IMG/VR virus record: IMGVR_UViG_3300028840_008185
Location: 62,001 to 126,000 of that record
DNA length: 64,000 nucleotides
Reading direction: 5' to 3' (one strand)
Made by a program: the position numbers and the translations under genes. Shown piece after piece: positions 12,728-49,909 of this stretch. Position 1 is the first letter of the stretch; each line of letters opens with the position of its first letter. The notes under the pieces were generated by a model. The model made no database searches and had not been told where the DNA came from. It worked only from the letters and a program-made list of their open reading frames with translations.

Positions 12728-12728
12728 A

Positions 12729-19036: not shown

Positions 19037-19081
19037 AAGAGCGAAAAAAATCAAATATCCCGCTCCACACGCGCAATTTTT
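19037..19081. promoter_or_regulatory. 45-bp dispersed intergenic motif, copy A
   Basis: 35/45 identical to 61522-61566. Confidence 0.6.
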
Positions 19082-29664: not shown

Positions 29665-29665
29665 T

Positions 29666-29947
29666 CTATTCTCCAATCAAATATGTTTCGATGTATTCTT
29701 TCACCTCGTTTGGAGCTATACCGGGGCCGCTCCACTCGCCAGTTTCTCTATCTTGTTTCAAGTCCAAACCTGGATAGAGATCATGATAAGATATTCTATG
29801 AACTTTCCTATCTGGGGATCTCACAAGAACACCTGGATTGCTGCCACTTCTCACCACAACCCATTGCCACTCTTGGCCATCCACATGAACTTTTCTCTCA
29901 TTTTTCCACGCCATCATCCACCTCGTCCACCTCGTCCCATTCGACAT
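29666..29947 (-). CDS. Hypothetical protein
   Basis: 93 aa ORF. Confidence 0.5.
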   Translation of the reverse strand: MSNGTRWTRWMMAWKNERKVHVDGQEWQWVVVRSGSNPGVLVRSPDRKVHRISYHDLYPGLDLKQDRETGEWSGPGIAPNEVKEYIETYLIGE

Positions 29948-30070: not shown

Positions 30071-30622
30071 TCACGGCATCTCCTTGAGACTCTCCACGAG
30101 CTTTCGTGATTCCAGATATTCCAAAACCGCCTTCGGAACCATGTGGGAAACATCTTTTCCTTGTTTAAGGAGCCAGCGTATATAAGAAGAACGAATCTGC
30201 AACACTGGATTGCTGGCGTATAGCTGGGCAGGAACCCACATAATATCCGCCAACTCTCTAATTTCATCACTCTTATACCACTTTTTATCAAACTCAAAGA
30301 ACAGGTCATCACCCAAGATAAGAGTATAGCGAGCTTCCGGATAGTCTGCAATTAAGTATTTCAACAAGTCGTAAGTTCTTCCAGTGTTTATTTCCTTTTC
30401 ATAATCTACAGCCATGACATTATGAGGGAAAAGCTTCCTAACCATGATGTTGCACATATATAACCGATTATAAAAAGACAGCATCTTATCTTTGAACGGA
30501 TGCTTATAGCAGGGAGCAACCAAAATCTCATCGAAATCTTCCCTGGCCAGAGCATATTGAATCATTGCAGCATGGCCTATGTGGGGCGGATTGAAGCTTC
30601 CTCCTACAATTCCTATTCTCAT
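30071..30622 (-). CDS. nadD: Nicotinate-nucleotide adenylyltransferase
   Basis: GGSFNPPHIGH, ILGDD, IRSSYIR. Confidence 0.9.
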   Translation of the reverse strand: MRIGIVGGSFNPPHIGHAAMIQYALAREDFDEILVAPCYKHPFKDKMLSFYNRLYMCNIMVRKLFPHNVMAVDYEKEINTGRTYDLLKYLIADYPEARYTLILGDDLFFEFDKKWYKSDEIRELADIMWVPAQLYASNPVLQIRSSYIRWLLKQGKDVSHMVPKAVLEYLESRKLVESLKEMP

Positions 30623-30632
30623 TTTAATCTCC

Positions 30633-31115
30633 CTAGTGTGGAACCGGTCTATCACACTCTATAACTATGACCTTGAAACCTTCGTATTCGCTGGGCAAGT
30701 CGGACTTTGAGCCATCTATTAAGTAAGCTTCGATGACTTCCTCACCATCTTCAAGCCCTATACCACAGCCCCACATATTACCATCGGTGTGGTTCATACT
30801 AAAAGAATCCACAGCTCTTTCTATTGGGCTCGGCTCTTCCAGAGCCCTTTCCCAGCCATATACCAATGGCGGATCCACACGCACTTCCTCATAGAGAACA
30901 ACCTCACCCTTTTTAACTGCTTCAATTTGACTTTGGAGCCAACCTATCGCACTTTCAGCAGCATTCACGAAAAGTATTGAGGCAGCGGTTTTTCCCATTT
31001 GCCATGCCATTCCTGGAGGGGGCAAAGCCCCAAAACCAAATTCTCTTTTTGGCGTGTCTTCTGGCAGTGGACAAGGGCTGGGAGGAACAGAATCCTCAAA
31101 GTCTCTCTTACCCAC
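30633..31115 (-). CDS. Hypothetical protein
   Basis: 160 aa, coupled to vWA gene. Confidence 0.5.
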   Translation of the reverse strand: MGKRDFEDSVPPSPCPLPEDTPKREFGFGALPPPGMAWQMGKTAASILFVNAAESAIGWLQSQIEAVKKGEVVLYEEVRVDPPLVYGWERALEEPSPIERAVDSFSMNHTDGNMWGCGIGLEDGEEVIEAYLIDGSKSDLPSEYEGFKVIVIECDRPVPH

Positions 31116-31899: not shown

Positions 31900-32437
31900 T
31901 TGATTCCTCCAAATCATAAACATACACATCGCACGCTGTAAGCAAAGCTCCGATAAGCTCACTTACAATTCCCCAATCTCCGCCGCCCAAACCGCAACCA
32001 ATTCGCGGCATATGGATTGAAAGGTGAGTGTTAGTGGGCGGCAGAACCATACGACTCTTTAGATGACAATAGTGACCAATCCAGTTGTTCAAATCAGCCA
32101 GACATGCACAAAGCATATCATACCTAACGGCAACTGGATGGTCTGGAGCAGTGTATCCCTCTTGTGCGATCATGTTGCACACATAGAGCGGACCTTCCTT
32201 TTTAGGATCTTTCACCTGGACGAGTTGTATTTGCCCCAGCGGCAGCGTTTTGTTTGTGTCGTCCGTAGCCCACTTGAACCACTCTCTATACTTTCTCTCT
32301 GGTTCAGGCCACTTGTTAGACAGGGCAACAACAAAACCGCTCCCCCAACCTCCAAGATCATTACAAATATGAGCGATGATTCTCGCTCCCTTATTAACCT
32401 GGGGCTCTGTGGCATCGCCAGTTAGGTAGTGTATCAT
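31892..32437 (-). CDS. Macrodomain ADP-ribose hydrolase (TARG1/DarG/Poa1-like)
   Basis: GDAT, IAHICNDLGGWGSGF, MPRIGCGLGGGDW. Confidence 0.9.
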   Translation of the reverse strand: MIHYLTGDATEPQVNKGARIIAHICNDLGGWGSGFVVALSNKWPEPERKYREWFKWATDDTNKTLPLGQIQLVQVKDPKKEGPLYVCNMIAQEGYTAPDHPVAVRYDMLCACLADLNNWIGHYCHLKSRMVLPPTNTHLSIHMPRIGCGLGGGDWGIVSELIGALLTACDVYVYDLEESNE

Positions 32438-33459
32438 AGGGTAATCCCATCCCAGGTGGTAATTGGGTCAGTAGATTTAACAACATGCATCCCAGCCTTC
32501 TGGAACCTCTCGAAAGCCTCGTTAGCCTGGTCGGTGAAATCGATGCCAGGAATCACAACCGGAGAGGTGCAATCCTCCAGAAGATAAACCTTCTTGACCA
32601 GCTTGGGATCCTTGGTGTTAATCTCATTGAGCAGATCGTCAATCGTCCAAGCAACACAGTGAGACTTAGCCTGGCCAGCAATCACAACCGCATCAAAGTT
32701 GAGCAGCTTCTCGATAAAAGCAGTGTTCTTCTGGGCAATAGCAACGCCCTTTGCGGTGGTAAGAACTTCTGGACGAAGCACCGAATAGTTCTCAGTCAAG
32801 GGATTTCCACCCTTAATCTGGAAGTCGGTCTGGCTTCCACGAGCGATGTCATGGAAAAAGATGGCTTCTTCAAGAAGGGGAACAAGCGCATGGCCAACTC
32901 CACCAAGCATCGCGTGGTGTGGCCAGATAAGCAAAGCATACTTGCCCTCGTCAGCGAGAGTCTGTGTGTAGTGAAGGGCATACTTATGAAGCCCGGTGTA
33001 GCTGGCGTTAAGAACGCTGGCCATAACCGGATTCACCTTCCACACGCCCTTCTTAACATCGTCCGCAGAAATCATAGTGACACCGGGAGGAGGATGCTCA
33101 CCCTCATCATTGACCCAGAAATCCTGGTGGAAAATCTGCTTGCTCAAGTGAGTGTCCATCGTGGGAGAAATATTGGTAATTACATCCATATTCCTATAGA
33201 TAAACTCACAAAGCCGCACGATGTCTTTGTCCGCATCTACCACAGAAAGCTCCCCATCGGGATACGGCATACAGAAAGTATTCTGGCAGTCAATAGCAAT
33301 CAAGCAGACGCGAAGCTTATCTTTGGCCGCAGGCTGGAGGTCATGTCGCTTGGCCCACTCCTTTGCCCTGGTGAAAATATCCTCATACTTAACATGGAAA
33401 AGCTCATTAACTTTGCTCGCATCAAAGTGCGAGGGAACCGGAAGATCCAATTTACTCAT
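32434..33459 (-). CDS. pncA: Nicotinamidase (isochorismatase fold)
   Basis: IDCQNTF (Asp), MDTH, WPHH, KGGNPLTENYS (Lys), GQAKSHCV (Cys). Confidence 0.8.
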   Translation of the reverse strand: MSKLDLPVPSHFDASKVNELFHVKYEDIFTRAKEWAKRHDLQPAAKDKLRVCLIAIDCQNTFCMPYPDGELSVVDADKDIVRLCEFIYRNMDVITNISPTMDTHLSKQIFHQDFWVNDEGEHPPPGVTMISADDVKKGVWKVNPVMASVLNASYTGLHKYALHYTQTLADEGKYALLIWPHHAMLGGVGHALVPLLEEAIFFHDIARGSQTDFQIKGGNPLTENYSVLRPEVLTTAKGVAIAQKNTAFIEKLLNFDAVVIAGQAKSHCVAWTIDDLLNEINTKDPKLVKKVYLLEDCTSPVVIPGIDFTDQANEAFERFQKAGMHVVKSTDPITTWDGITL

Positions 33460-35327: not shown

Positions 35328-35985
35328 GCAACCCTTCCTTGAGACAAGGTAAGAAACAGAGTCTTAAACATAAGATTCTGGCCCAAATCAGACCTATTTC
35401 TGGCAAAATTAACACCCATCCAGAATATTGCCGGGGATACAGCCCCGACATGAGGAGCAATGGACACTCGTAAGTCTGAAGTATAAACCAGTTTAATCAC
35501 TTTAGCCATTTTCTCAAACCCCAAGACACCAGACCTAGCAAAGTGTCGTCCTCATCGTCAAAGGTCCAAAGCTCATTTAGGTTGTTGAAAAACAAACCAG
35601 TGAGGAGACGCCAAAAGTTAAGGGTCCTTTTTGACGCAGAACGAATTGGCTCAATCATTTCCCCACCTGCTTAATCCCCATCCACCTAATGTCCCCATAA
35701 GTAGTTTGTGTCCAGCAAGAACTATGCTTGGTCTAATATAGTTCAACAGGAAGTTGCCCATATTATATGTGGCGGCACTCACTTGTTTCTCACTTAGCCA
35801 TTTTCGCCTGTGATCGGCCCAAATTGGAATTATCACCATGAGTAGCCCCAACAAAAATCTCTTGGACGAAGCGCATGCACAAATAAATCACCAAGATGGT
35901 ATAGGGGATGCGACTCAAACTGAAATGCAAACTGAACCCAGAGTTTATGGCGATGCCGGTGGTTATTACTATTATCTATTTTCAT
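35324..35985 (-). CDS. Four microproteins between kinase and PP2C (35324-35524, 35497-35658, 35651-35854, 35833-35985)
   Basis: Two found by hand: MIEPIRS (53 aa) and MKIDNS...KLWVQFAFQFE (50 aa). Confidence 0.5.
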
Positions 35986-36805
35986 CTTTCCGTCTTATAG
36001 CAACCACGGTTGTATCATCCTTCAGGTGTCCATGCTGACGAGTAGCCACGCCATCAACTACCTTCACCACTTCTTTATTTATCCTGACCAGGCGCCTTTG
36101 TAAAGCCATTTTGTTGGTGAAGTATTTGTCCTTTGTCCAGAACTGGCTAAGTGGCCCAACCAACTCATCTTTGCCTGGGATACTCTTATTCTCGGCAGCC
36201 TGAAAGTCATCAAGCCCATCTGTCCCAATCACTAAGCTCTGGAAATTTTCAGCAAGGATTATCTCATTAACTTGAAACTTGGGGTTCCTAAACCGTTCAT
36301 CAACCGCCTGCGGAACAATACCGTATGAGGAATAGGGTGGGGCATTATTGGGAAAGGGGCCAATAGTTTTGACCTCTCCGTTTAGGGCATACACACCATC
36401 ACCAATGGACGCAATAGCAACCCAATACTTAGTAATGATGGCCACCATACAGGTGAATAGGAAATAGTCTTTAACAACCCCGACCAATTTCTCCTCAACT
36501 TTTCCTGTCCCCCAGATCATTTTCACGGCCAAGTCGGTGATATTGACGTTCAATTCCACGAGCCCCGTCACTTCCGTTTTGTCGAGGTCTCCAATATCCG
36601 CAATAAGTCTAAGCTGGTGGGGCAACATATATGCTGCAATCTTAGCTCCCACTTCGCTGTGAGCACCGCTTCCACAACCATCACAAACTACAGCAACTAT
36701 ACTGTCTGGTCTATGGACAACATTGTAGGCGTCGTGGTTATTCTTGTTGAGCCGCAAGTGGTCTTTGCCGATCACAGAACCGGCAGCAATCTCAAACCCC
36801 TTCAT
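35972..36805 (-). CDS. PP2C-like phosphatase (TerY-P-like)
   Basis: GKDH...NHDA, VCDGCGS, IGDG, GTDG, DDTT. Confidence 0.85.
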   Translation of the reverse strand: MKGFEIAAGSVIGKDHLRLNKNNHDAYNVVHRPDSIVAVVCDGCGSGAHSEVGAKIAAYMLPHQLRLIADIGDLDKTEVTGLVELNVNITDLAVKMIWGTGKVEEKLVGVVKDYFLFTCMVAIITKYWVAIASIGDGVYALNGEVKTIGPFPNNAPPYSSYGIVPQAVDERFRNPKFQVNEIILAENFQSLVIGTDGLDDFQAAENKSIPGKDELVGPLSQFWTKDKYFTNKMALQRRLVRINKEVVKVVDGVATRQHGHLKDDTTVVAIRRKDENR

Positions 36806-37127: not shown

Positions 37128-38489
37128 CTAACCAGTTGAAACTGTTTCTTTTGGCCTGCCGTTGCCCCTTTTTCTTCTTTTGAGTCTCCTCGCTGTTTTG
37201 CTTACCAGTTGTGGGCCATCTGGGCTTACGGGCTCATCACCCTCCTCTTCATTGCACACACCAGCCATCGTCTTCATGTGCTCCACAACCTCTTTCAATT
37301 CCTCAAACTTACCCTCGGTAATCGCCTCCTTGATTTCACCATACTGTCTAACAGTAATCTGGAGAGCCACTTCTCTCAAATAAGCAGGCGTCATACCTTC
37401 AGTAATTTCAGCAACTTCATCAAGATAAGCATTGGCCAGGCGCATCTCGAAAGAATCAAGGTAGGCTTTGACTATCGCTCTGCGCTGTTCAACATTGGGA
37501 AAATCAAACATGATGATCTCATCGAATCTTCCAGGGCGCCTCATCGGCTCGGGCAACTCGCCCAGATGATTCACGGCGCCCATGATTACTACGTTGCCAC
37601 TTCCCTTATATCTGTTGAGCGCTTCGACAGTGCCCAGCAGCATATCTAATCCCTGCTCTCCAATCCTATCCATATCATCAAACAAAACGACGCTCGGAGA
37701 AAGAGCCCTAAAGATCTTCTCCAAGGGAAGAGAATACTCCGACGCAAAGTTGAGAGCAGGAGCATCTATCACTATAAGCTGGCCATCGAGCATACTGGCT
37801 ATTTTAGCGGCCAGAGTCGTCTTTCCACAACCGGGCGGACCAAAAAGTAGGGAAGATCGATTGAGATTCATCTTCTGGAACCTCTTGATATTATCGAAGA
37901 ACTTTCCCTCATCGAAAGTAGAAACGTATGTATCCAGCGGAATCTCTATCTCTCTAATGCGGATGAATGTGTTCCAACCCTCTATGCCCATAACAACCGA
38001 GATGTTTTGGCCCATGTTTTCTCGAACGACTTTCGAGAAGGCATCAATAAACTTATCCTCGTCCTCTGCCCACATCCCTTCTAAAGACCCATTTTCAATA
38101 GCAAAATAGGCATCACAACCAGGCAACTCATAAAGAACAGTTCTAATATCACTGCCCTCTTCTTTCTTAACGAAAGGAGTGGAGTAAGGATAGTCAATCT
38201 CTTGTAGAGCATAATAAACAAGGCGTTCCATCCTATAAAGGATGGGCTTCAGACCAGTATCGCGCAGTCTGGACAAAAGATCCTTCTCCTCTTTTTCAAA
38301 GATCTTTTCAAGAGCATCGTAAGTGCTGGCCAAACTCATGCCCGCATATATAAGATCCTTCTTCTTGATGGCCAAATATATCTCAAAGCCAGCTCTACCA
38401 ACGGCTATGGCCTTTCTGATCTTCTCCTTGATCTTTCTCTTGTCGCGCCTATATTCTATTGTCGATTCTTTGTCGCGCTCAAACATCAT
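37128..38489 (-). CDS. Classic-clade AAA ATPase
   Basis: GPPGCGKT, VLFDDMD, second region of homology VNHLGELPEPMRRPGRFD. Confidence 0.9.
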   Translation of the reverse strand: MMFERDKESTIEYRRDKRKIKEKIRKAIAVGRAGFEIYLAIKKKDLIYAGMSLASTYDALEKIFEKEEKDLLSRLRDTGLKPILYRMERLVYYALQEIDYPYSTPFVKKEEGSDIRTVLYELPGCDAYFAIENGSLEGMWAEDEDKFIDAFSKVVRENMGQNISVVMGIEGWNTFIRIREIEIPLDTYVSTFDEGKFFDNIKRFQKMNLNRSSLLFGPPGCGKTTLAAKIASMLDGQLIVIDAPALNFASEYSLPLEKIFRALSPSVVLFDDMDRIGEQGLDMLLGTVEALNRYKGSGNVVIMGAVNHLGELPEPMRRPGRFDEIIMFDFPNVEQRRAIVKAYLDSFEMRLANAYLDEVAEITEGMTPAYLREVALQITVRQYGEIKEAITEGKFEELKEVVEHMKTMAGVCNEEEGDEPVSPDGPQLVSKTARRLKRRKRGNGRPKETVSTG

Positions 38490-39394
38490 ACCACCAGACC
38501 TTTTCTCTTCAAGTAATCTCGTGGGATTTCTGGGGGCGGCTCAGCCTTATGACGAGTGGCTTTCTCCATTTTCCTCATGGCCCTAACAACTTTACACTGC
38601 TCTTCCGTATAGCCGAACTCCTCGGGGTCAGTATCTTCCGCCAAACCCCGAATCAAGCCAAAATCTTCATCCTCTCTGCTGCACCACTCAATAGTTCCCA
38701 TCTCTTCTTGACCTGGGCGAGTGTAAGTTAGTGGAACTCCACAGAGATCTTCTAACTCTTCTTCGTCGTTGTGTTCCTCACCAACTCCCCAAAGATCTGG
38801 AGTAGGAACGGCATTGATGATCTCCTCTGGGACGCCCAGATGTTCCGCCAATTCCCATACTTCGCTCTTAAACAAGGAACCAATCCAATTAGAATCGACT
38901 TCTCCATCGCCTCCCTTTTGGTAAAACCGAACATACTGATCTTCATCCCTGTTTCCTGTTCCTTGTCTAATCCCTCCGCCAAACAACCTATTCACGAAGC
39001 GCCCAACGGGCGCCCTGATACAACTTCTAAAGCTGCCGTAAGTTGTTGGGTTCTCATTTTCATCAGGCCAAGGGAGCCCAAGACGCTCAAACTCTCGCCT
39101 AATTTGGGCACGAACCGTAAAGAACACGGGAGCCAGGTGTAGCTCTATGAAATTGAATCCAAAAGTCTTAGCAACCAATCTGGCTCGTCTAAGAGACTCG
39201 GGGGAAGAATTAACATCGCTATAAACCCCGATTACATTTTCGGAGCCAAAAGCCCTACAAGCCAGAGCAGCCACAACGGCACTATCAACGCCACCAGAAA
39301 TATCAATCTCAGCTTTGTCTGTATGAGCTTCGTTGGCCTGCTTTCTCATATACCAAACTATCTCTTCAACGAGCTTTTCGTAATCAAGAATCAT
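38486..39394 (-). CDS. nadE: NH3-dependent NAD+ synthetase
   Basis: ISGGVDSAV, GTGNRDE, KGGDG, LFKSEV, PTPDL; no glutaminase domain. Confidence 0.93.
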   Translation of the reverse strand: MILDYEKLVEEIVWYMRKQANEAHTDKAEIDISGGVDSAVVAALACRAFGSENVIGVYSDVNSSPESLRRARLVAKTFGFNFIELHLAPVFFTVRAQIRREFERLGLPWPDENENPTTYGSFRSCIRAPVGRFVNRLFGGGIRQGTGNRDEDQYVRFYQKGGDGEVDSNWIGSLFKSEVWELAEHLGVPEEIINAVPTPDLWGVGEEHNDEEELEDLCGVPLTYTRPGQEEMGTIEWCSREDEDFGLIRGLAEDTDPEEFGYTEEQCKVVRAMRKMEKATRHKAEPPPEIPRDYLKRKGLVV

Positions 39395-40803: not shown

Positions 40804-41913
40804 TTATTCCTCCTCTTCGGGCTCATAAATGATGGGTTGGTTTGAGAAACAACCCCTGTCTAACTGCGCTCTTTCACAAAGTTCCCCAGCATCAAGCTCA
40901 TGCATAGCATTAACGCCAGGCGGAACAAGACCATCCTTAATCATCGTAGCCACGGCGCCCACCACATATCCAGTTGCCTGGGCCATAGCTGGAAGATCAT
41001 ATTCGTAATCATACTCAAAAAAGTATCTCTCAATTATCTCATCGCCATCTTCGTAATCTATGTGGAAACATAGGGTAACCACGTCCGGATTGTCCGCATT
41101 AATTTCCGGCAAAACGCTGTCCAACACGTAGACTGGATCCTGTTGATTGAGAATATGGTTTTGGACGAACTCCCAATGACCTGGGAAACGTAATGTCTTA
41201 TAGGCAAGGTTCTGGATATTGAGTCCATAAGGCAGTATTGATAAACCACCTGACGTGCGACGGGCTCTGAGTAGTCCCAAGCCTGGGACAAACACATCTT
41301 CTTCACCTGAGAGGGCCGGATAATTACGGACTTCTCCATTCACAATCTCCCTTGCTATGCCCAGATATTCTTTAATCATGCCGCCGGTATAGAAAGTTTT
41401 ACCGTGATAATGCGGAGCTTCTGGATATTTCACAAGCCCAGCACAATAAATCCTAATACCAATCACGCCGTCGTCTTTAGCTATGTCGGCAGCCATAGGA
41501 GAAATAATACCTGGGGCTAGGCCAGCCTCAAGAACGTTTATGGAGCCAACTTTCGCTGCCTTATCATGTAGTTCCGACTGCTTCAAAGCGACCTCAGTGC
41601 TTCCACCCAGGTCGATGAAATGATGAACATATCCCTTAGCCGATTCATCCAAGCAATACTTCATAATTCTCAGGTTTTCCTCTGTAGGCAAGCAGCTAAT
41701 AACAATGAGTTGCTCTTCTTCTTTTGTCTTGGGCATAAAGGAATAGGAAAAGCCATTCTCTTTGTGCTCCAACCTATCGCCACACATTTCTACTATGTGC
41801 TCAGGCGGCGGCTTTGGATCCAATACAACCATCTTATCTTTAGTTTCCTCGTAAAGATATTTGGTTATGGCTTGGCCCTGGATTCCAGAACCTCCAAGTA
41901 TTACGAATTCCAT
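40804..41913 (-). CDS. Saccharopine dehydrogenase-family oxidoreductase
   Basis: Rossmann ILGGSGIQG, FIDLGG, AGLAPG, YKTLRFPGH. Confidence 0.85.
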   Translation of the reverse strand: MEFVILGGSGIQGQAITKYLYEETKDKMVVLDPKPPPEHIVEMCGDRLEHKENGFSYSFMPKTKEEEQLIVISCLPTEENLRIMKYCLDESAKGYVHHFIDLGGSTEVALKQSELHDKAAKVGSINVLEAGLAPGIISPMAADIAKDDGVIGIRIYCAGLVKYPEAPHYHGKTFYTGGMIKEYLGIAREIVNGEVRNYPALSGEEDVFVPGLGLLRARRTSGGLSILPYGLNIQNLAYKTLRFPGHWEFVQNHILNQQDPVYVLDSVLPEINADNPDVVTLCFHIDYEDGDEIIERYFFEYDYEYDLPAMAQATGYVVGAVATMIKDGLVPPGVNAMHELDAGELCERAQLDRGCFSNQPIIYEPEEEE

Positions 41914-42046
41914 ATGTTCCTCCTTATGAAATCGTAGACTGTTCCAGCCACGCGGAACGGCCACTCAACATAATCAAATATAGTACATCTCAAATCAAAT
42001 AGCTTTTGATCTAAGGTTCTTTCGGGCTCTTCTTCAGACTCAATCC

Positions 42047-43456
42047 TCACGGCTTTTCTTTTCCAACCAAGCAACGCCATTGTTTTGGATCCTTATCTAA
42101 TTTAGGCTGGGAATACTTTATCCAGAACTCAATGATTTGTTCTGGGGTCATGTCTGCGCTAATCTTATTCTCCAGCAAAAGCCCATCGAGTATCTTTTTA
42201 ATCTCGCCAACCTTCGCCCCAGGTTCAAGATGGAACCTATCCATGATGGCGTTTCCAATGCCCTTGGGCAACCTGGGACGCGCATCCTTTTCTCTAATAG
42301 CTTCAAGGGCTTCCTTGAGAAGCCTGCTGTGAGCACCATGTCTCTCTTTGATATTAGGCTTGTTAGAGGTGCAGTCTGCGGAGAAGAGGTCGATTAAGTC
42401 ATCAATGTCGCAGCCTCTTTCATCACAGTCTCTAATCAGCCTCCGCAGCGCATTCTCGCTTACCGGTGGGTCATATCTTCTGCTCACTACATCGCCTACT
42501 CTTTGGTGCAAGGCCACAAGACCCTTAATAGAACGCCGAAGCTTGTTAGACATTCTATATCTTCTGGCTATACCTTCCACCATCTCAGCACCAAGATATT
42601 CGTGCTGCCAGAAATGAACTTCGTTAACATCCTCAAACCTGGTGTAGGGCTTGCCGATGTCGTGTAGAATAGCAGCCCATCTAAGGGCCAGCCTTGCGGG
42701 CGTTCCAGCGGTCACAAGCATCGTGTGCCGGGATAGGTTTTTACTCGCAACTTTGGCCTGAGGATCATTAAGCGTCATCGCATACACTTCAGGCAGCAAG
42801 TATCCAAGCAGTCGTGAGGCATAAAGAAGAGCAAATCCCTTGTTGATGTTGCCCAGCAGAAGCTTGCTCATCTCATCAAACCACCTCTCCCTGCTTACGG
42901 TCATAATGGCTTGAGCATATTCCTTAATGGCACTCAAAGTTCTATCTTCCATGTCAAAATCAAGCTGGGAGCAGAACCTCACTGCCCGTAGCATCCTCAA
43001 CGGGTCTTCACCAAACCTTGCTTTGGGAGAGCCCGTAGCTTTGACCAATCTTCTGCCGATGTCTTTGAGGCCACCAAAGGGATCAACAACTTTGCCCTTG
43101 GCGTCCATGGCCATTGAATTAATTGTGAAGTCTCTTCTCGCCAGGTCTTCTTCCAGATTGTCCGTGAAGACCACATCGGGGTGACGCCCAGGCGTCATGT
43201 CTTTGCGATGAGTGGTGATTTCCACATCCATCCCATCAAATTTGGCCGCAATCGTGCCGAATTTCTCGCCTAAAGGCCAGTGTTTATATCCTGCTTTATC
43301 AAGTATCTCTTTGGTTTGTGGTGGTCTTGCGTCTGTTGTGAAGTCATAATCCTTGGGCTCTCTCCCAAGCATGATGTCTCTTACAGAACCACCAACATGG
43401 TAGAGTTTATATCCACCATCCTCAAACGCTTGGAATAACTTTTCGAACATTATCAT
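42047..43456 (-). CDS. cca: CCA tRNA nucleotidyltransferase with HD domain
   Basis: VGGSVRD, DYDFTT, DLARRDFTINSMA, EDPLRMLRAVRF, LHDIGK. Confidence 0.92.
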   Translation of the reverse strand: MIMFEKLFQAFEDGGYKLYHVGGSVRDIMLGREPKDYDFTTDARPPQTKEILDKAGYKHWPLGEKFGTIAAKFDGMDVEITTHRKDMTPGRHPDVVFTDNLEEDLARRDFTINSMAMDAKGKVVDPFGGLKDIGRRLVKATGSPKARFGEDPLRMLRAVRFCSQLDFDMEDRTLSAIKEYAQAIMTVSRERWFDEMSKLLLGNINKGFALLYASRLLGYLLPEVYAMTLNDPQAKVASKNLSRHTMLVTAGTPARLALRWAAILHDIGKPYTRFEDVNEVHFWQHEYLGAEMVEGIARRYRMSNKLRRSIKGLVALHQRVGDVVSRRYDPPVSENALRRLIRDCDERGCDIDDLIDLFSADCTSNKPNIKERHGAHSRLLKEALEAIREKDARPRLPKGIGNAIMDRFHLEPGAKVGEIKKILDGLLLENKISADMTPEQIIEFWIKYSQPKLDKDPKQWRCLVGKEKP

Positions 43457-44066: not shown

Positions 44067-44490
44067 TTACCACCACAAACTACCTCTCAGTTCTATGATT
44101 CTCTCTCTTATTAGTCTTCTATATTCCACGGCATCGAGCCCCTTAACAATAACATCTTCCACTATCTTATGGAAAAAGTTGGCGTAGGATATGTTGCCTA
44201 CCCGCATCTTGCTTGCGAAAAGATCATACATATCATGCCATATATCGTTCTTGAAGCCGCTGCCCCTATATGTTCTGGTTGGTTTAATTTCCATCTACCC
44301 GATCCTTAAGGATTTTACACTGGCACCAAAAATCTACAAACAAGAAATCCTCAAGGACATCGTAAGCGGGCCACTTGCCAGCAAATATATCACTGGCGAC
44401 ATGCCCCCAGAACATACAATACGGATAGAAAGTTCTATCTATTCTTTCATTACCTTCCACGCCCTTGATGTTCCTCTTTTCAATCTGCAC
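44067..44490 (-). CDS. Two microproteins (MEIKP 44067-44294; MQIEK 44284-44490)
   Basis: 11-nt overlap ATGGAAATTAA. Confidence 0.55.
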
Positions 44491-44621
44491 GCAAAACCTC
44501 CCACAAAATTCCAGAAATCGTTTGGGATTCTACGCGAATATCAGATATGAAATAGGCAAGATCGACCATCGGCCAAAAGTAATCAGGTGGCGCTTTAAAC
44601 ACCTTGTTCAGCACCCTTACA

Positions 44622-45542
44622 TCAACCCACATAGCCCTGCCTGAAATGGTCAAAAGCATCCACCGCCGTAGAAAGCCACTCTTCTTTCAAGCAGATTTCA
44701 TCGCACAGCATCATTTTCTTATAGCCAATATCATACAGCCACGCAAGCTGTAGGAAGTCGGCACAAGAGGGAACGGGGGCATCAACGATGGAAAGCAACA
44801 TCCTCGAACCCACAAGAGCTTTGGGATCTCGCTCGATGATTAGCTTGAGAGCCTTGGTAATCTCATGTGGCTTCTCAACCTCCACATACATATCACCAAG
44901 AGCAGCAACCAGACGCAACCCTTCTTGATCACGATACTCTCTGGCTACATACTCCAAGCCTTTCTGGTTCTCAATCTTGGCGATAATCAAAGAATCTTTG
45001 CCTACAAACTCCCTGAACTCATCAATATCCCGTTGGCTTTCCACATACGAGAGAAAGAACTTGTTGAATCCAGCCTTCCTGGCTTTCTCAATCTTCTCAA
45101 TCTCAAAGGGCAGAAAAGTCGGGCCAAGAACTTCCAGGCTTGGATCTCTAATGTGCAGAGATTCACCCTCATATACCATGTATTCTGGCCCGCTCTCGAA
45201 GACCAGATGGGTTCCGTCCCTCACCTCTTTCAACAGGCAGCAATCTTCGCCCGCCTTGAAAAGAACCATGGTGGGAGTCTTCACCTTGATGGGGTGGTTA
45301 AGCTTGAGTTCCAGCCTGTCGGGGAGAATAATTGTCTCAACAATACGAAGTTGCTTGCCTTTAATATCGAAATACAAAGGCACGGAATCTTGAATCTTCC
45401 TAGCAATATCAAGCTCGGTGTCTAACGCTTCTCCCTTAACCATCGCACTATTAAGCCTGATGCCGTTGAGTCGTTTATCAACCACGAATCTCTTGAAGTG
45501 AGAAAAGGTTGGCCACATCGTCACCATTAAATCCAAGCCCAT
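44622..45542 (-). CDS. Truncated pyruvate-kinase-like protein
   Basis: GIRLNS, FDIKGKQLR, IAKIENQKGL, ALGDMYVEV; lacks PK C domain. Confidence 0.75.
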   Translation of the reverse strand: MGLDLMVTMWPTFSHFKRFVVDKRLNGIRLNSAMVKGEALDTELDIARKIQDSVPLYFDIKGKQLRIVETIILPDRLELKLNHPIKVKTPTMVLFKAGEDCCLLKEVRDGTHLVFESGPEYMVYEGESLHIRDPSLEVLGPTFLPFEIEKIEKARKAGFNKFFLSYVESQRDIDEFREFVGKDSLIIAKIENQKGLEYVAREYRDQEGLRLVAALGDMYVEVEKPHEITKALKLIIERDPKALVGSRMLLSIVDAPVPSCADFLQLAWLYDIGYKKMMLCDEICLKEEWLSTAVDAFDHFRQGYVG

Positions 45543-45543
45543 A

Positions 45544-45735
45544 TTATCCTCCAAACAGCTTGTATAAGACATACGCCAGTGGGCCAAATCCAACGGCCAA
45601 TATAATCACGACAAGTAGTTTTTCGACAGTGTGCTGGGCACCGCCGCCACTAGTAGTCATAATCAAGCCCAAGCACCCACAAACCACAGCCCACGCAATA
45701 GAAAAGACAAGGGCTATTGCTAAAATAGCTTCCAT
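45544..45735 (-). CDS. 2-TM small protein
   Basis: Hydrophobic 63 aa ORF. Confidence 0.5.
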   Translation of the reverse strand: MEAILAIALVFSIAWAVVCGCLGLIMTTSGGGAQHTVEKLLVVIILAVGFGPLAYVLYKLFGG

Positions 45736-45747
45736 TAACTTACCTTT

Positions 45748-46728
45748 CTATAGCAACGACTTGGTTTTCTTGCCCTTGGTCTTCTTGTGAAGCTTAGAGG
45801 CAGACTTCAGAAGCTTGCGATCCTCAGGCGGAGAAACCTTATGAATCGTCTTGAGCGATTTCATAACCGTCTCGACCTGATGTGGCTCCTGCCTATCCTT
45901 GATTTCCTCCTTGAAATACTTAATCTTATCGGTTTCTTTGGCCAGAATACCGAAGATTGTATCAACAACTCGGCCAGCTTCAGGCAGGATAGAGATATGG
46001 TCAGCACCAAGAACCTTTTCCCACTGTGAGTAGATGGCCTTATCGATTGGGCTCATGTCGTCAGTTCCAGTGGATCTGTAGGGCTTCCTGATCAGATAGA
46101 CCGAGAATTTTCTCTTAAGCTCCTCAAAAACATCCACAGAATTCATACGCTTCTGCATAGCGGTCTTAGCGAACTTCTCGCCAAGGCTCTTGTTGATTGT
46201 GTCGTAGAACCCTTCGTCACCAATGATGATACAAATCGGGTTAATGGCCTTGGGCATGTGGATGTTTCGGGCACAGTAAAGAGCAGCAATCTCGTAGGTC
46301 TCCTGCTTGGAGCCTCCACCACCACCCTCGATGACAAGCTCCTTGAGCTTCTCTTTGATGTCGGTGTCCTTTGAGAACTCCCTAATCTGGAATGGATAGG
46401 AGTCATTGCACATAGCATCGCCAATGGCTCCCCACGCAATCTCCATATCCTTGCCCAAATACTCTTTGGTTTCGTGCTCAAGATACGGGAGCTTTGAGAA
46501 CATGGTGGCTGGCCATGCACCCATGGAGCCCGTCACATCACAAAGAATAACAAGAGGTGCAGGGCTGTTGGTCGTAATCGAATCAGGAATCAGATCAGTG
46601 CTTCCCTTGTTCGCAGCCTTAGCATCACCATAGCTTCTATTAACATGTCGGTCATAGACCTTGCGGGCATCCGAAAAAGAGGTGTGCCCCTTCCATTTTC
46701 CTGGGTTATAATCAGCAGTTTCAGACAT
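45748..46728 (-). CDS. vWA domain protein
   Basis: CDVTGSM, GAIGD, EGGGG, ETYE, IIGDE. Confidence 0.75.
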   Translation of the reverse strand: MSETADYNPGKWKGHTSFSDARKVYDRHVNRSYGDAKAANKGSTDLIPDSITTNSPAPLVILCDVTGSMGAWPATMFSKLPYLEHETKEYLGKDMEIAWGAIGDAMCNDSYPFQIREFSKDTDIKEKLKELVIEGGGGGSKQETYEIAALYCARNIHMPKAINPICIIIGDEGFYDTINKSLGEKFAKTAMQKRMNSVDVFEELKRKFSVYLIRKPYRSTGTDDMSPIDKAIYSQWEKVLGADHISILPEAGRVVDTIFGILAKETDKIKYFKEEIKDRQEPHQVETVMKSLKTIHKVSPPEDRKLLKSASKLHKKTKGKKTKSLL

Positions 46729-46891
46729 TTTTGTTCTCCTTTTCATGTCTCCAATCATACAAAGTCGAATTCATATCCCAAGCCCAAGGAGCCACAACTT
46801 CCAAATCTCTTAATACTTGAGAGATAGTGGGACTCCAACCTTTAAGCTTGAGCCTAGCTTTAGCTTTACGCATCTCCAATGCTTCTATCAT
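46721..46891 (-). CDS. 56-aa microprotein
   Basis: Hand translation MIEALEM...; overlaps both neighbours. Confidence 0.45.
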   Translation of the reverse strand: MIEALEMRKAKARLKLKGWSPTISQVLRDLEVVAPWAWDMNSTLYDWRHEKENKNV

Positions 46892-47928
46892 TTAAAACCT
46901 GGAATGTTCATACCAAAAGAACATGTCCTTTTGAAAGTTTGCTGTCTGATGTTTTGCAGCTCCTCCATCAAACTCTCTTCGTTCCATCTTGGCCTGGCCA
47001 AAACATCATACACAATCAACTTCTTGATGAATTCACAAACCAGGTCGGGCGTTCTTTTTGGAACGTCCCTGCTCCCCACATCACCGCCCAGAGCATAAAC
47101 CATCGTCATCCCAAGCGAATAATAATCCGACTCGGGGAGTAAAGGCATGCCCTTGATTTGCTCAGGTGGGGCAAAATGAGGAGTGTAGCCCAGACTCTTA
47201 GAGCTACTATTTGGTCTGACTACCGAAAGGCCATAATCTACGAGAACAACCGTATGACTACTGGGCTGAATAATAATGTTCTGTGGCTTCACGTCGCCAT
47301 GAACAGTGGCGTGATAGTGGAGATACATTAGGGCATTAAGGCATCTCTCAGTGATCCAGCATACGTGCTCTGCATCCAAGCCGCCGTTTTTCTCAATGAT
47401 TTGTTCCAGGGTTGGCCCAGGAATGTAGCTCATGACCAAGGCCAAGCTGCCGTCATCCAGCTTTAGAATATCTCTAATAGCCGGAATGGCAAAGTGCCTC
47501 AAATCCCAAATAGATTTTGCCTCTCCCATCAGGATTTCCTCATCCTGAGGAGAGATATTTGAGGCGTGCTTGATACAAACTGGAGTGCCCAAGCTCACAT
47601 GCTCGCCCTTGTATGTCTTTCCGAAGCCACCTTCAGCAATTTGCTCAAGGATTCTATAAGCCCCAACTACAGTTCCCTCAAGATCATCTTTGCCAGCATC
47701 ATACTTCTTGCGGGATTTGGCGTTAGATAATACTTGGTGAGCTTCATTGAGCTGCTTGGAAACTCTATCATCTTCGCACTTGTCGGGATGAAAGATTTTC
47801 ATCAAGGCTTTATATGCGGCTCCAATTACCTCTGGCCGTGCCCTCGGAGAAACCTCAAGCACGTCGTAATAATCCTTCTTACGGCTCGCCACGACCGACC
47901 TCCTTGTTTCTTTTGCATCCATTTTCAC
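46888..47928 (-). CDS. J-domain / Ser-Thr kinase fusion
   Basis: DYYDVL...FHPDK...RKKYD; IAEGGFGKTY, HGDVKPQN, DYGLS, APPEQ, DYYSLG. Confidence 0.9.
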   Translation of the reverse strand: MKMDAKETRRSVVASRKKDYYDVLEVSPRARPEVIGAAYKALMKIFHPDKCEDDRVSKQLNEAHQVLSNAKSRKKYDAGKDDLEGTVVGAYRILEQIAEGGFGKTYKGEHVSLGTPVCIKHASNISPQDEEILMGEAKSIWDLRHFAIPAIRDILKLDDGSLALVMSYIPGPTLEQIIEKNGGLDAEHVCWITERCLNALMYLHYHATVHGDVKPQNIIIQPSSHTVVLVDYGLSVVRPNSSSKSLGYTPHFAPPEQIKGMPLLPESDYYSLGMTMVYALGGDVGSRDVPKRTPDLVCEFIKKLIVYDVLARPRWNEESLMEELQNIRQQTFKRTCSFGMNIPGFK

Positions 47929-49909
47929 AGTCTATAACAACATCGCCGGTTTTGTTTAAGTGAAACCCCCGGCCATGACACTTGGCGCATGACTGAGCAA
48001 CACTTCCTCCAACCACATTGAGCTTGGACATATCAAAAAGATTGCCGCCCATTGACCCATCGTGGTAGTGCTTTCCATCAGTGTGCTCGGGAATGGTTTC
48101 ATCCATCATATAAGCACACTTATTTGGTGTGCATTGAATAATATAGACGCTGTGCGTCTTTATATCAACCTCTTTGAGATTTGGACAATACTTTGCGAGC
48201 CTTTCAAAAAGCTGCCTCTGCTCCGTGATGTTAAGCCAATGTTCGGGGAACGACAGGAACAAGCTCTTTACATCCTTCCTGACTTCCATCCGGTCGTATA
48301 GGCTCTCCAGGACACCACGACCCATGAACATTTCCATTTCGAGACTGTCATCTCTCAAATTGGGGCGTGTGTAGATATACACAGAAAGTTCAAACGGGTA
48401 ATCACGCATCATCTTCCTCGTCGGCAACGGGAGCATCCCAATCAGGATCTCGCTCAGGGTCATCCACAAACTCTATCTCATCCAGGGCCAGGTGAGCGTC
48501 TCCCCTCATTGCGGCCACAGACACATCCTCAATATCCATATCGCTGGGGTCTTCTTCGCTCCAGATAATTATTACCCTCTTCCACAATCCTTTATTTGGA
48601 TTCATAGACCTCCTCGACTTTCTTCTTTTGCGTGGCGGGAGAAGTTGTCTCCTCGTCCAAATAGTAATGGCCAAAGACCAGAACACCAATTATGAGCAGA
48701 AGCAGAAAGATGAATCGCCCATGAACCATCTGGTCATTTGATAGGCAATATTTACATCGCCCAGCCATTATTGGGATGCTGCTCCAGCAGTGGAAACATA
48801 GCTTTTTCATTCTGTTCCTGCCTTCTCCACTATGCCAAAGGCTATGCTTTGTGGAACGAACATCAACTCATCTTTGCCGTTGTCAAAAAAGGCGAAAGAC
48901 CAGTATGGCTTGGAATCAGTTGGAGGGACAACGCCCTTGAGCCTTCCAAACCACCTATTCTTGGCTCCATGATAGATGTATAGTATGACGTTCTTGCCGA
49001 CAAAATCTCCTAGTTCCAACGGCTTTGCGTTGTCTCTATAAACACTCATTTATACACCGTCCCGCCTCTGCTTATCACAACTATCTCGCCCTTCTTTGTC
49101 CCCGACAAACACTCGCAGAAATAAGTTCCCTTGTTTCGCGGGCTTAGGCGAAATATATCAACGCAGTATCCATGACAGGCATCGAGCGCGTCGTTAGTAT
49201 AGAAGGGCTCTTTCTTGGTTTCACGCACGGCCACTACGCAACTGGCCAGAAGGAAAGCCAAAATAATCAGTATCTTATACATCGAAGCACTCCTTAAGAA
49301 GACCAATAATCTTCTCCGCCATTTCTTTGTCCCTAACGATAAAGTATGAATATCGTTTATATGTGCCCCCTTGACTCTTGAAAGCAGCGAGCATCGTTTC
49401 TTCTGGCCCATACATCTCACCAGACCCCTCACGATCTTGAAACTTAAAAGCCAGTGCTGCCCAAGGCCCACCCTTTTTAAGGAGCCTCTTGTCTGTCTGC
49501 CTTCTCAGTTGGACACCAAGCTGGCTATATCCAACATCAAGCTCATCTATGGTTTCTGCTTGCAGGCCAGATGTTTTCCGCATCACCTTATCTTCCATTA
49601 GTCTTCCTCTGGTATAAAATAGCCAAGTTGCCCATGGGAGATGTGTTTATGATACATCAGTTTACGCTTATCACGCTTATCCTCTGGCTCCTCCCATACC
49701 CTCATCTCTATTCCTTTTTCCATGAGCGTGATCTCTAAACTATGACGGTCATCAAGTTTTCTCGAAACAGTATCGTCATCTACAACCCATTTGTATTGAG
49801 ACAAATTCTCACTCCTCGTCTTCCTCGTCCTCTTCCACGAGACAAACAACGTCTTCCAATTTGGCAACAACAACGTTCTCAGGTGCTCCAAGACCAAGTG
49901 GAATAGCAT
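47879..49909 (-). CDS. Run of hypothetical proteins (47879-48469, 48402-48602, 48592-48810, 48807-49049, 49046-49282, 49275-49598, 49598-49909)
   Basis: Coupled small ORFs; some Cys-rich or exported. Confidence 0.5.

What the first reader, a model, noticed from the sequence alone, without database searches (positions are those of the whole stretch)
45748..47928. J-domain-kinase fusion paired with a vWA protein: a second vWA/kinase module
Seen: an intact HPD J-domain fused to a complete Hanks kinase, next to a DxTGS vWA gene. Known: HPD J-domains activate DnaK. Inference: a kinase targeted to DnaK or its clients, i.e. phospho-hijacking of the host chaperone.
Basis: partly seen in the sequence, partly recalled or inferred. 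Interest (0 to 1): 0.6.

Follow-up and report, generated by a model that had tools for sequence, protein, structure and literature searches.

The report
J-domain kinase, vWA, mini pyruvate-kinase cassette
A huge phage carries a chaperone-recruiting J-domain fused to an active protein kinase. Its conserved partner seems to be the neighbouring vWA protein and a stripped-down pyruvate kinase, a pair that comes from bacterial NAD-synthesis operons, so the kinase more likely controls that module than attacks the host chaperone.

Summary
Window 46888-47928(-) encodes a canonical HPD J-domain fused to a catalytically complete Hanks kinase. Window 45748-46758(-) encodes a vWA-fold protein with an intact MIDAS-like site (DVTGS...S/T...D).

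1. The pair belongs to a three-gene cassette, J-kinase, vWA, mini pyruvate kinase (44622-45593). It recurs in more than 1000 metagenomic relatives, 18 of 20 viral loci and 78 of 80 species-representative loci, while the flanking genes change.
2. A control-checked complex model (0.76 against 0.00) docks the kinase C-lobe on the vWA body. It puts the vWA's conserved basic Ser tail in the catalytic cleft. That tail occurs only where a kinase is the neighbour.
3. vWA plus mini-PK is the older core. In true bacteria it sits between an NMN adenylyltransferase and NAD synthase, with no kinase. An intermediate clade has a kinase without a J-domain.

The J-domain is therefore a late addition, and its HPD is lost in 14-31% of relatives while the kinase residues never change.

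'Phospho-hijacking of DnaK' is not excluded, but it is not the best reading. The kinase more likely regulates, or is regulated by, the vWA/mini-PK module, with Hsp70 recruited to that complex. I found no published description of this architecture.

The parts
46888..47928 (-). J-domain-kinase gene (longest ORF 346 aa; probable start GTG 47892 behind AGGAGG, giving 334 aa)
47698..47874 (-). J-domain (residues 19-77); HPD codons at 47782-47790
   Evidence: Pfam DnaJ E 5e-15; same coordinates from the own-genome scan; helices II-IV in the model; codons read
46933..47658 (-). Hanks-type Ser/Thr kinase domain, non-RD type (HGD). Pfam covers 47080-47658; the modelled C-lobe runs to about residue 332
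45748..46758 (-). vWA-fold protein gene (longest ORF 336 aa; probable start ATG 46728 behind AAGGAG)
45928..46566 (-). vWA fold proper (residues 65-277) with MIDAS-like D74-x-T76-x-S78, S/T154 and D181
45751..45819 (-). Disordered basic C-terminal tail of the vWA protein (residues 314-336). It holds conserved Ser321 (codon 45796-45798) and the ...KKTKSLL end, and is predicted to lie in the kinase catalytic cleft
44622..45593 (-). Mini pyruvate kinase: about 305 aa, too short for the C-terminal regulatory domain, and no PK_C match. Probable start ATG 45542 behind GGAGG. Third conserved gene of the cassette

Best explanation
The two genes are the first two of a conserved three-gene cassette: J-domain-kinase, vWA protein, mini pyruvate kinase.

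The old core is vWA plus mini-PK. In free-living bacteria this pair sits inside an NAD-synthesis operon (NMN adenylyltransferase, vWA, mini-PK, NAD synthase). There the vWA protein ends in a zinc ribbon. In phage-like and small-genome lineages a Hanks kinase was added upstream, and the vWA protein gained a basic Ser-containing tail in place of the zinc ribbon. In one clade, which includes this phage, the kinase then gained an N-terminal J-domain.

Proposed mechanism (inferred): the kinase C-lobe docks on the vWA body. The vWA tail, with Ser321, sits in the catalytic cleft as a substrate or as a substrate-like gate. Phosphorylation then switches the vWA/mini-PK module. That module is a PK-type phosphotransferase with all catalytic residues kept, and it probably serves NAD or ATP supply. 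The J-domain and the MIDAS face stay free. The J-domain recruits host DnaK to this complex, plausibly onto the Leu- and Lys-rich tail, to assemble, release or reset it.

Shown by tools: the domains, the conservation, the gene order and its history, and the control-checked complex model. Inferred: phosphorylation of Ser321, the role of DnaK, and the chemistry of vWA plus mini-PK.
For: Domains and catalytic completeness.

vWA fold and invariant MIDAS, kept down to 28% identity.

Cassette conservation: J-kinase, vWA and mini-PK in that order in LR745208 and in 18 of 20 IMG/VR loci, while none of eight flanking window genes recurs. vWA is followed by mini-PK in 78 of 80 species-representative loci.

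Complex model: ipSAE 0.76 against 0.00 for the best of 3 controls. That mark was reached by 58 of 80 solved complexes and 2 of 110 mismatched pairs. The runs agree in at least 97% of contacts and the partner's pLDDT is at least 77. My own alignments were used, so the calibration counts hold only roughly. vWA tail residues 314-336 touch kinase residues 100, 212, 214, 234 and 246-256. Kinase residues 282-311 touch vWA residues 168-174 and 215-219.

Tail: Ser321 is present in 116 of 120 homologues within the motif ...SG+S[VI][MT]+...KKTKSLL. The tail occurs in the kinase-linked groups. It is replaced by a CPxCG...C..C zinc ribbon in 10 of the 17 loci that lack a kinase, all those from large bacterial contigs with this operon among them.

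History: group B has a kinase in 17 of 17 loci, with only 0-40 residues before the kinase domain where the ORF start is on the contig (no J-domain), an NMNAT-like gene in 15 and NadE in 14. Group C has no kinase, an NMNAT-like gene in 11 of 17 and NadE in 8 of 17.

Mini-PK keeps the PK motifs R-x-N, D-x-K-x-x-x-x-R, K-I-E and G-D.

This phage also carries a NAPRT-family gene, a NadD-like gene, a nicotinamidase-like gene and NadE within 33 kb of the cassette.

The 318-kb record holds no Hsp70 and no second J-domain, so the Hsp70 partner must be the host's.
Against: - No experiment. The complex model is a prediction made with my own alignments.
- I could not see which tail residue faces D212.
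- In this copy the tail differs from the consensus (SASKL in place of SGKSVM).
- In the J-bearing clade the cassette is almost never next to NAD genes (1 of 46 loci). The NAD link for this phage therefore rests on ancestry and on loose proximity.
- What vWA plus mini-PK does chemically is unknown. The five bacterial genomes I searched all have NadC, and three of them also have a NAPRT-family match, so no missing step points to a role.
- Most relatives keep HPD, so Hsp70 engagement clearly matters in most lineages, and DnaK could still be a phosphorylation target.
Confidence: 0.45

Rival explanations
1. The J-domain tethers host DnaK, or DnaK-bound clients, to the kinase, which phosphorylates them and so takes over the host chaperone. 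The vWA protein is an accessory or a targeting subunit.
For: Canonical J-domain with HPD and a basic helix II in this copy. Active kinase joined to it by a short linker. No phage Hsp70 in the record. HPD kept in 103 of 120 close homologues. A phage J-protein that hijacks DnaK is known: Rki of RB43 (PMC3486835). From my own knowledge: Legionella LegK4 phosphorylates Hsp70, and the DNAJB1-PKAc fusion recruits Hsp70 to a kinase.
Against: The kinase-vWA-miniPK linkage predates the J-domain (group B: 17 of 17 loci with a kinase, none with a J-domain). HPD is lost in 11 of 36 species-level relatives while every kinase residue stays. The modelled cleft is filled by the vWA tail. The mycobacteriophage homologue keeps HPD but has lost the catalytic Asp (HGA) and the Gly loop, so there a J-domain is kept without a working kinase.
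Confidence: 0.2
2. Two unrelated jobs in one polypeptide. The J-domain recruits host DnaK to help fold or assemble phage proteins, or the cassette's own proteins. The kinase is a general host-takeover or anti-defence kinase like T7 gp0.7, with many host substrates. The vWA neighbour is one substrate or an unrelated neighbour.
For: J-domain co-chaperones are scattered among jumbo phages and are thought to aid folding and assembly (PMC7824862). Phage kinases of PHROG 2361 are widespread.
Against: Strict co-inheritance and gene order of kinase and vWA from huge phages to cluster C mycobacteriophages at 24-28% identity. A specific, control-checked interface. A tail motif that tracks the presence of the kinase.
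Confidence: 0.15
3. The vWA tail is a pseudosubstrate inhibitor. The vWA protein holds the kinase inactive until a ligand binds the MIDAS face or DnaK pulls the tail out. The released kinase then acts on other targets. This is a sensor-switch reading of the same complex.
For: The tail lies in the cleft. The MIDAS face and the J-domain are outside the interface. The tail is rich in Leu, Lys and Arg, which from my own knowledge resembles DnaK-binding peptides.
Against: The conserved residue is Ser (116 of 120), not Ala as in classical pseudosubstrates. No ligand is known.
Confidence: 0.15
4. Chance neighbours: three unrelated genes kept together only because the phages are related.
For: All close relatives form one clade of large phage-like genomes.
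Against: The flanking genes are not conserved while the three genes are. The pair persists at 24-28% identity in mycobacteriophages, and vWA plus mini-PK persists in bacteria of several phyla.
Confidence: 0.03

Closest known systems
Rki (gene 057w) of T4-like phage RB43, a phage class C J-domain protein (PMC3486835)
   Same: Phage-encoded protein with an N-terminal HPD J-domain that acts through host DnaK.
   Different: Rki has no kinase domain and no vWA or PK partners. Its known effect is stabilisation of sigma-32. No sequence kinship beyond the J-domain was tested.
DNAJB1-PRKACA chimera (J-PKAc; PDB 4wb7, 8fe2, 8fe5)
   Same: J-domain fused N-terminally to an active Ser/Thr kinase catalytic domain. 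Foldseek aligns the whole model to it (E 7.5e-17, 382 columns).
   Different: A somatic human gene fusion with an AGC kinase and a class B J-domain. The overall rmsd is high (25 A), so the relative placement of the two domains differs. This is analogy, not homology of the fusion.
Bacterial Hanks kinases PknA and PknB/Stk1
   Same: Best sequence and structure matches for the kinase domain: profile E 1.5e-28 to S. aureus PknB/Stk1, TM by target 0.75-0.79 for PknA and PknB, NCBIfam Stk1 family E 7e-33.
   Different: No transmembrane segment or PASTA repeats. Non-RD catalytic loop (HGD). Scores far below the equivalog cut-off (114 against 450 bits).
Cluster C mycobacteriophage pair (Catera gp249 'kinase' and gp250)
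   Same: Homologous adjacent pair in about 200 phages. The profile alignment runs from J helix II, including HPD, through the kinase (99% probability). gp250 keeps the DVTGS site.
   Different: Catalytic Asp replaced (HGA), no Gly loop, DWC in place of DFG: probably a pseudokinase. No mini-PK. An adenylosuccinate-synthetase-like gene lies two genes downstream.
Kinase-PP2C-vWA gene triads and vWA conflict systems (Kaur et al. 2020, PMC7159879)
   Same: A Hanks kinase genetically coupled to a stand-alone vWA protein.
   Different: No PP2C in the cassette (the nearest is 9 kb away, beside another kinase-like gene). No NTPase. The vWA family here has no Pfam match and is tied to a mini pyruvate kinase.
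Phage NAD+ reconstitution pathways NARP1, NARP2 and NARP3 (bioRxiv 10.1101/2024.02.11.579819; PMC13464706)
   Same: Phage-borne NAD synthesis genes. The ancestral setting of vWA plus mini-PK is an NMNAT/NadE operon.
   Different: None of the defining enzymes (Adps and Namat; NMN-based salvage; PnuC and NadR) is part of the cassette. No vWA or PK-like component is mentioned in the NARP3 paper that I searched.
Pyruvate kinase
   Same: Profile matches to the PK barrel (E 4e-10) with the metal and phosphate ligand motifs kept. Atlas structure TM 0.83 by query to full-length PK.
   Different: About 305 aa with no C-terminal allosteric domain. 42 bits against a cut-off of 306 for the PK equivalog. 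Always paired with the vWA protein.

Membership tests
J-domain proteins (class C) | Pfam DnaJ profile match over the whole J-domain | tested here: met
   55.8 bits against a cut-off of 27.8, profile positions 1-63 of 63; 59.5 bits in the genome scan
J-domain proteins (class C) | HPD tripeptide in the loop between helices II and III | tested here: met
   H47-P48-D49, codons at 47782-47790; helices 32-46 and 54-68 in the model. In relatives: 103 of 120 and 25 of 36 keep it
J-domain proteins (class C) | Stimulates Hsp70/DnaK ATPase | not testable with these tools
   Needs a biochemical assay.
Hanks-type (eukaryote-like) Ser/Thr protein kinases | Complete catalytic set: Gly loop, VAIK Lys, alpha-C Glu, HxD Asp with Asn, DFG Asp, APE Glu | tested here: met
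   G100-G103, K120, E136, D212, N217, D231 and E256 invariant; 120 of 120 catalytic loops intact; Pkinase 108.8 bits against a cut-off of 31.7
Hanks-type (eukaryote-like) Ser/Thr protein kinases | Arg before the catalytic Asp (RD kinase, regulated by activation-loop phosphorylation) | tested here: not met
   HGD in all 120 homologues: a non-RD kinase
von Willebrand A (vWA) domain | Alpha/beta/alpha Rossmann-like vWA fold | tested here: met
   Z 14-15.6, rmsd about 3 A, 184-198 residues aligned to integrin beta-I and alpha-I domains; NorD vWA is also among the Foldseek hits
von Willebrand A (vWA) domain | MIDAS motif DxSxS ... T ... D | tested here: met
   Variant D74-V-T76-G-S78, S/T154 and D181; invariant from phages to bacteria. 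Metal binding was not tested
von Willebrand A (vWA) domain | Match to a curated vWA sequence profile (Pfam or NCBIfam) | tested here: not met
   No Pfam or NCBIfam family at E up to 0.01. Only PHROG 2971, of unknown function. The vWA assignment rests on fold and motif
Pyruvate kinase | PK barrel with the catalytic Lys and the metal and phosphate ligands | tested here: met
   Motifs R-L-N, D-I-K-G-x-Q-L-R, K-I-E and G-D conserved; Pfam PK 36.7 bits against a cut-off of 30
Pyruvate kinase | C-terminal allosteric domain and a full-length equivalog score | tested here: not met
   About 305 aa; no PK_C match; 42 bits against a cut-off of 306 for TIGR01064
Kinase-PP2C-vWA triad (Kaur et al. 2020) | A PP2C phosphatase gene adjacent to the kinase and vWA genes | tested here: not met
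   No PP2C in the cassette here. The window's PP2C (35972-36805) lies beside another kinase-like gene
NARP1, NARP2 and NARP3 NAD+ reconstitution pathways | Adps plus Namat; or NMN-based nicotinamide salvage; or PnuC plus NadR-like | tested here: inconclusive
   The cassette proteins are none of these. The phage has a NAPRT-family gene, a NadD-like gene, a nicotinamidase-like gene and NadE elsewhere in the window. Adps, Namat and PnuC were not searched for

The most novel reading that the evidence does not exclude
vWA plus mini pyruvate kinase is an undescribed two-protein enzyme or energy module of NAD metabolism, for example a PEP-driven phosphotransfer that feeds the adenylyltransferase and NAD synthase steps. 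Huge phages and small-genome lineages would have placed it under a dedicated kinase switch and, in one clade, coupled it to Hsp70 through a J-domain. That would make it a new phospho- and chaperone-controlled route by which a phage keeps NAD or ATP supply going in an infected or NAD-depleted cell.
Probability: 0.2. Interest if true: 0.8.

Novelty: new variant of a known kind. Interest (0 to 1): 0.62.

Why it matters
**A widespread architecture with no description found.** J-domain proteins and Hanks kinases are both well known. A natural J-domain-kinase fusion with more than 1000 relatives, in phage-like contigs of up to 654 kb, does not appear in the papers I could search.

**A testable model.** The work turns a bare domain observation into a specific proposal: a kinase docked on a vWA protein, with that protein's tail in the catalytic cleft.

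**A possible gap in NAD metabolism.** The vWA/mini-PK pair sits in bacterial NMNAT-NadE operons and has no assigned function. NAD supply is a main battleground between phages and bacterial defence (the NARP pathways), so a new NAD-linked module under kinase and chaperone control would interest both phage biology and NAD enzymology.

**A caution for annotation.** An intact HPD in one copy does not show that Hsp70 activation is the conserved function. A third of species-level relatives have lost it.

Tried and rejected
- **DNA search against phages.** A megablast of the locus found nothing, so the relatives had to be found at protein level.
- **Promoter and terminator scan of 44300-48700.** Counts were no better than in shuffles: 9 against 6.1 +/- 2.4 promoter-like sites and 4 against 3.6 terminator-like sites. 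No operon boundaries can be claimed from it.
- **vWA plus mini-PK as a replacement for nicotinate phosphoribosyltransferase.** Rejected. The phage has a NAPRT-family gene. All five bacterial genomes I searched have NadC, and three also have a NAPRT-family match.
- **A phage-encoded Hsp70 as the J-domain's partner.** None in the 318-kb record, which is 79% complete.
- **The 341-aa gene at 32434-33459 as the 'first' vWA.** Rejected. It is isochorismatase- or nicotinamidase-like.
- **The upstream overlapping gene (47879-48469) as part of the cassette.** Rejected, because it is not conserved in any related locus.
- **Is the record cellular rather than viral?** Pfam terminase and tail-sheath profiles found nothing. 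However, the record has 40 tRNA genes on one strand, no 16S motifs, near-uniform gene orientation and IMG/VR classification as a virus, all of which fit a huge phage. The 780-aa 'PHROG 15585' protein proved to be Lon-like, so it is not a viral hallmark.
- **Literature.** Searches for a J-domain-kinase fusion in phages found no description. The review by Barriot et al. 2020 on J-proteins of bacteria and their viruses is not held, so prior mention there cannot be excluded.
- **Sequencing runs.** The stretch occurs only in sediment and seawater DNA metagenomes, with no RNA run. I did not lay reads, because contigs cannot show expression.
Full report
**What the record is.** The window is bases 62001-126000 of a 318-kb IMG/VR virus record. 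The whole record has 40 tRNA genes, all on one strand and 35 of them in the first 50 kb. It has no 16S motifs and nearly all long ORFs lie on one strand. In the window every gene near the finding is on the minus strand. That fits a huge phage. The Pfam terminase and tail-sheath profiles found nothing, so the viral nature rests on IMG/VR's classification, the tRNA array and the relatives described below. The same stretch occurs in sediment and seawater DNA metagenomes, with no RNA run.

**The observation.** The ORF at 46888-47928(-) carries a full Pfam DnaJ domain (residues 19-77, E 5e-15) followed by a Pkinase domain (residues 91-283, E 4e-31). HPD is encoded at 47782-47790. An AlphaFold2 model (pLDDT 88.5) shows the J helices followed by a complete two-lobed kinase. 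Its best structural matches are M. tuberculosis PknA and S. aureus PknB. The human DNAJB1-PKAc chimera, another J-domain joined N-terminally to a kinase, is also among the top hits.

In 36 aligned homologues the Gly loop, K120, E136, H210-G211-D212, K214, N217, D231, G233, P255-E256, D268 and R312 are all invariant. The catalytic loop is intact in 120 of 120 homologues. It is a non-RD kinase (HGD).

The ORF at 45748-46758(-) has no Pfam or NCBIfam match. It folds with pLDDT 84.5 into a vWA domain: Z 14-15.6, rmsd about 3 A over about 190 residues against integrin I-domains, with NorD vWA also among the hits. D74-x-T76-x-S78, S/T154 and D181 form a MIDAS-like site that does not vary.

Starts with good Shine-Dalgarno sequences lie at 47892, 46728 and 45542.

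**A third gene.** Both proteins have more than 1000 relatives in metagenomes, on contigs of up to 654 kb, and the two hit lists share many contigs. In the 485-kb phage LR745208 and in 18 of 20 IMG/VR loci the order is J-kinase, vWA, then a homologue of the next window gene, 44622-45593(-). None of eight flanking window genes recurs in those loci.

That third protein is a pyruvate kinase cut down to about 305 residues. The profile matches PK structures (E 4e-10). The R-x-N, D-x-K-G-x-x-x-R, K-I-E and G-D motifs are conserved, and there is no C-terminal domain.

**Do the kinase and the vWA protein touch?** A complex model scored ipSAE 0.76, against 0.00 for the best of three controls. That mark was reached by 58 of 80 solved complexes and by 2 of 110 mismatched pairs. 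The three runs agree in at least 97% of contacts and the partner's pLDDT is at least 77. My own alignments were used, so the calibration counts hold only roughly.

The kinase C-lobe (residues 282-311) sits on vWA residues 168-174 and 215-219. The otherwise disordered vWA tail (residues 314-336) touches G100, D212, K214 and the activation and P+1 segment (residues 246-256). The J-domain and the MIDAS residues are not in the interface.

The tail has a conserved motif, with Ser321 present in 116 of 120 homologues and the end ...KKTKSLL. This is support for binding, not proof of it.

**History of the module.** A scan of species-representative genomes with the vWA alignment gave 80 loci, and vWA is followed by mini-PK in 78 of them. 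They fall into three grades:

| Group | Loci | Kinase beside | J-domain | Mini-PK | NMNAT-like | NadE |
|---|---|---|---|---|---|---|
| A: vWA at least 43% identical to the window's | 46 | 42 | 34 (by tblastn) | 46 | 0 | 1 |
| B: vWA below 43%, kinase beside | 17 | 17 | 0 | 16 | 15 | 14 |
| C: vWA below 43%, no kinase | 17 | 0 | 0 fused (1 separate DnaJ gene) | 16 | 11 | 8 |

- In group B only 0-40 residues precede the kinase domain where the ORF start is on the contig, which leaves no room for a J-domain. The J hit in group C (L099) is a separate class B DnaJ gene (DnaJ plus DnaJ_C), not a fusion.
- Group C includes Chloroflexota, Polyangia, a complete 8.8-Mb Thermoanaerobaculaceae chromosome and Acidobacteriota. 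The typical order there is NMNAT-like, vWA, mini-PK, NadE.
- In 10 of the 17 group C loci the vWA protein ends in a CPxCG...C..C zinc ribbon in place of the basic Ser tail; they include the Chloroflexota, Polyangia and Thermoanaerobaculaceae loci with this operon.

So vWA plus mini-PK is the old core, and it is tied to NAD synthesis. The kinase came later, together with the tail. The J-domain came last.

The DVTGSM site and the PK motifs are unchanged across all three grades.

**How firmly is the J-domain's function kept?** HPD is intact here and in 103 of 120 close homologues. Fifteen carry substitutions such as HSD, SKD, SPD, GPD or RPE, and two are alignment gaps. Among species-level relatives with a J-like region, 25 keep HPD and 11 have lost it, while all kinase residues stay.

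Cluster C mycobacteriophages (about 200 genomes) carry a homologous adjacent pair. Catera gp249 aligns from J helix II, including HPD, through the kinase at 99% probability. It has HGA in place of HGD, no Gly loop and DWC in place of DFG. gp250 keeps DVTGS. So each half of the fusion can decay in some lineage. What never breaks is the adjacency to the vWA gene.

**Interpretation.** The best-supported reading is that the kinase's dedicated partner is the vWA protein. Its tail is either a substrate or a gate in the cleft, and this controls a vWA/mini-PK module of NAD-linked ancestry. The J-domain then brings host DnaK to that complex; the record itself has no Hsp70 and no other J-domain.

The tail is rich in Leu, Lys and Arg, which from my own knowledge resembles DnaK-binding peptides. 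Loading DnaK onto the tail is therefore a reasonable but untested step.

It does not explain the J-less clade, the repeated HPD losses or the modelled occupancy of the cleft.

What vWA plus mini-PK does chemically is open. It does not simply replace NaPRT. This phage already carries a NAPRT-family gene (11378-12802), a NadD-like gene (30071-30655), a nicotinamidase-like gene (32434-33459) and NadE (38486-39394).

**What is known.** Phage J-proteins are known: Rki of RB43 (PMC3486835), and scattered DnaJ-domain proteins in jumbo phages (PMC7824862). Kinase-PP2C-vWA triads are known in bacteria (PMC7159879). Phage NAD reconstitution pathways NARP1-3 use other enzymes (bioRxiv 10.1101/2024.02.11.579819; PMC13464706). 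I found no description of a natural J-domain-kinase fusion or of a kinase-vWA-miniPK cassette. One relevant review could not be read.

**Verdict.** I rate this a new variant of known kinds, with a specific and testable mechanism and an unexplained NAD-linked enzyme pair behind it.

**Open point.** Group A loci include records labelled as CPR bacteria and DPANN archaea. Among them are a 1.16-Mb chromosome (CP010425.1) and a 1.24-Mb contig. The genomes of the five such loci I searched (L042, L045, L048, L067, L093) have DnaK, and in CP010425.1 it lies about 10 kb from the cassette. I did not resolve whether these are cellular copies, integrated elements or mis-binned phage.

Noticed in passing
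window 11378-12802(-), 30071-30655(-), 32434-33459(-), 38486-39394(-): A near-complete nicotinate/nicotinamide salvage set spread over 28 kb: a NAPRT-family protein (Pfam NAPRTase E 1e-8), a NadD-like nicotinate-nucleotide adenylyltransferase (NCBIfam E 2e-29), a nicotinamidase/isochorismatase-like protein (weak matches only) and an NAD synthase (E 2e-28). The phage invests heavily in NAD supply.
   Followed up: partly
It comprises a 284-aa protein with a DDSGS motif (vWA by motif only, not folded), a 618-aa protein with a weak kinase match followed by a Cys-rich segment (CxxC...CxxC, zinc-ribbon-like by eye) and a C-terminal part of unknown fold, and a PP2C phosphatase (E 5e-17). It resembles the kinase-PP2C-vWA triads of Kaur et al. 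2020.
   Followed up: partly
window 47879-48469(-): The gene upstream of the J-kinase overlaps its start by 14 bases (50 bases for the longest ORF). It ends with a CxxCxGxG motif, the DnaJ zinc-finger repeat, followed by a CxxxC. It has no family match and is not conserved in any related locus.
   Followed up: partly
window 29113-29676(-) and 37128-38489(-): A proteasome-subunit-like protein (Pfam Proteasome E 2.5e-7) and an AAA ATPase whose best NCBIfam matches are proteasome-activating nucleotidase and CDC48 (E about 1e-18). Together they may be a phage-borne proteasome-like degradation pair.
   Followed up: no
G000:C1:1-50000 and 149000-185000 (outside the window): 40 tRNA genes, all on the same strand, 35 of them packed in the first 50 kb of the record. 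A CCA-adding enzyme lies in the window at 42047-43456.
   Followed up: no
L067 (CP010425.1, 1.16-Mb 'Archaeon GW2011_AR15' chromosome), L048 (1.24-Mb Patescibacteria contig), L045, L042, L093: The vWA/mini-PK core, with the J-kinase in four of the five (no kinase in L093), occurs in records labelled as DPANN archaea or CPR bacteria. Their genomes of 1.2-1.5 Mb also carry Hsp70. In CP010425.1 DnaK lies about 10 kb from the cassette. I could not tell whether these are cellular copies, integrated elements or mis-binned phage.
   Followed up: partly
L003 (Mycobacterium phage Catera, 6317-7645) and L028 (Vibrio phage SRILMA, 2312-2962 and 4830-5942): In both phages the vWA homologue lies one or two genes upstream of an adenylosuccinate-synthetase-like gene (Pfam E 3e-55 and 1e-40). 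The Vibrio phage has no kinase beside it but has a NADAR-domain gene two genes upstream (E 7e-49). This is another nucleotide or ADP-ribose context for this vWA family.
   Followed up: partly
window 19080-21422(-), 8873-10261(-), 25200-26093(-), 40804-41964(-): A Lon-like 780-aa protein (PHROG 15585, E 6e-241, annotated 'lon' in Acinetobacter phage records), an ATP-dependent DNA ligase, an RlaP RNA-repair nucleotidyltransferase and a saccharopine-dehydrogenase-like protein.
   Followed up: no
L084, L085 (records labelled Promethearchaeota and Sigynarchaeum): vWA homologues with the bacterial-type C-terminal zinc ribbon and a mini-PK 1.5-2.3 kb downstream, with no kinase, in records labelled as Asgard archaea.
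   Followed up: no
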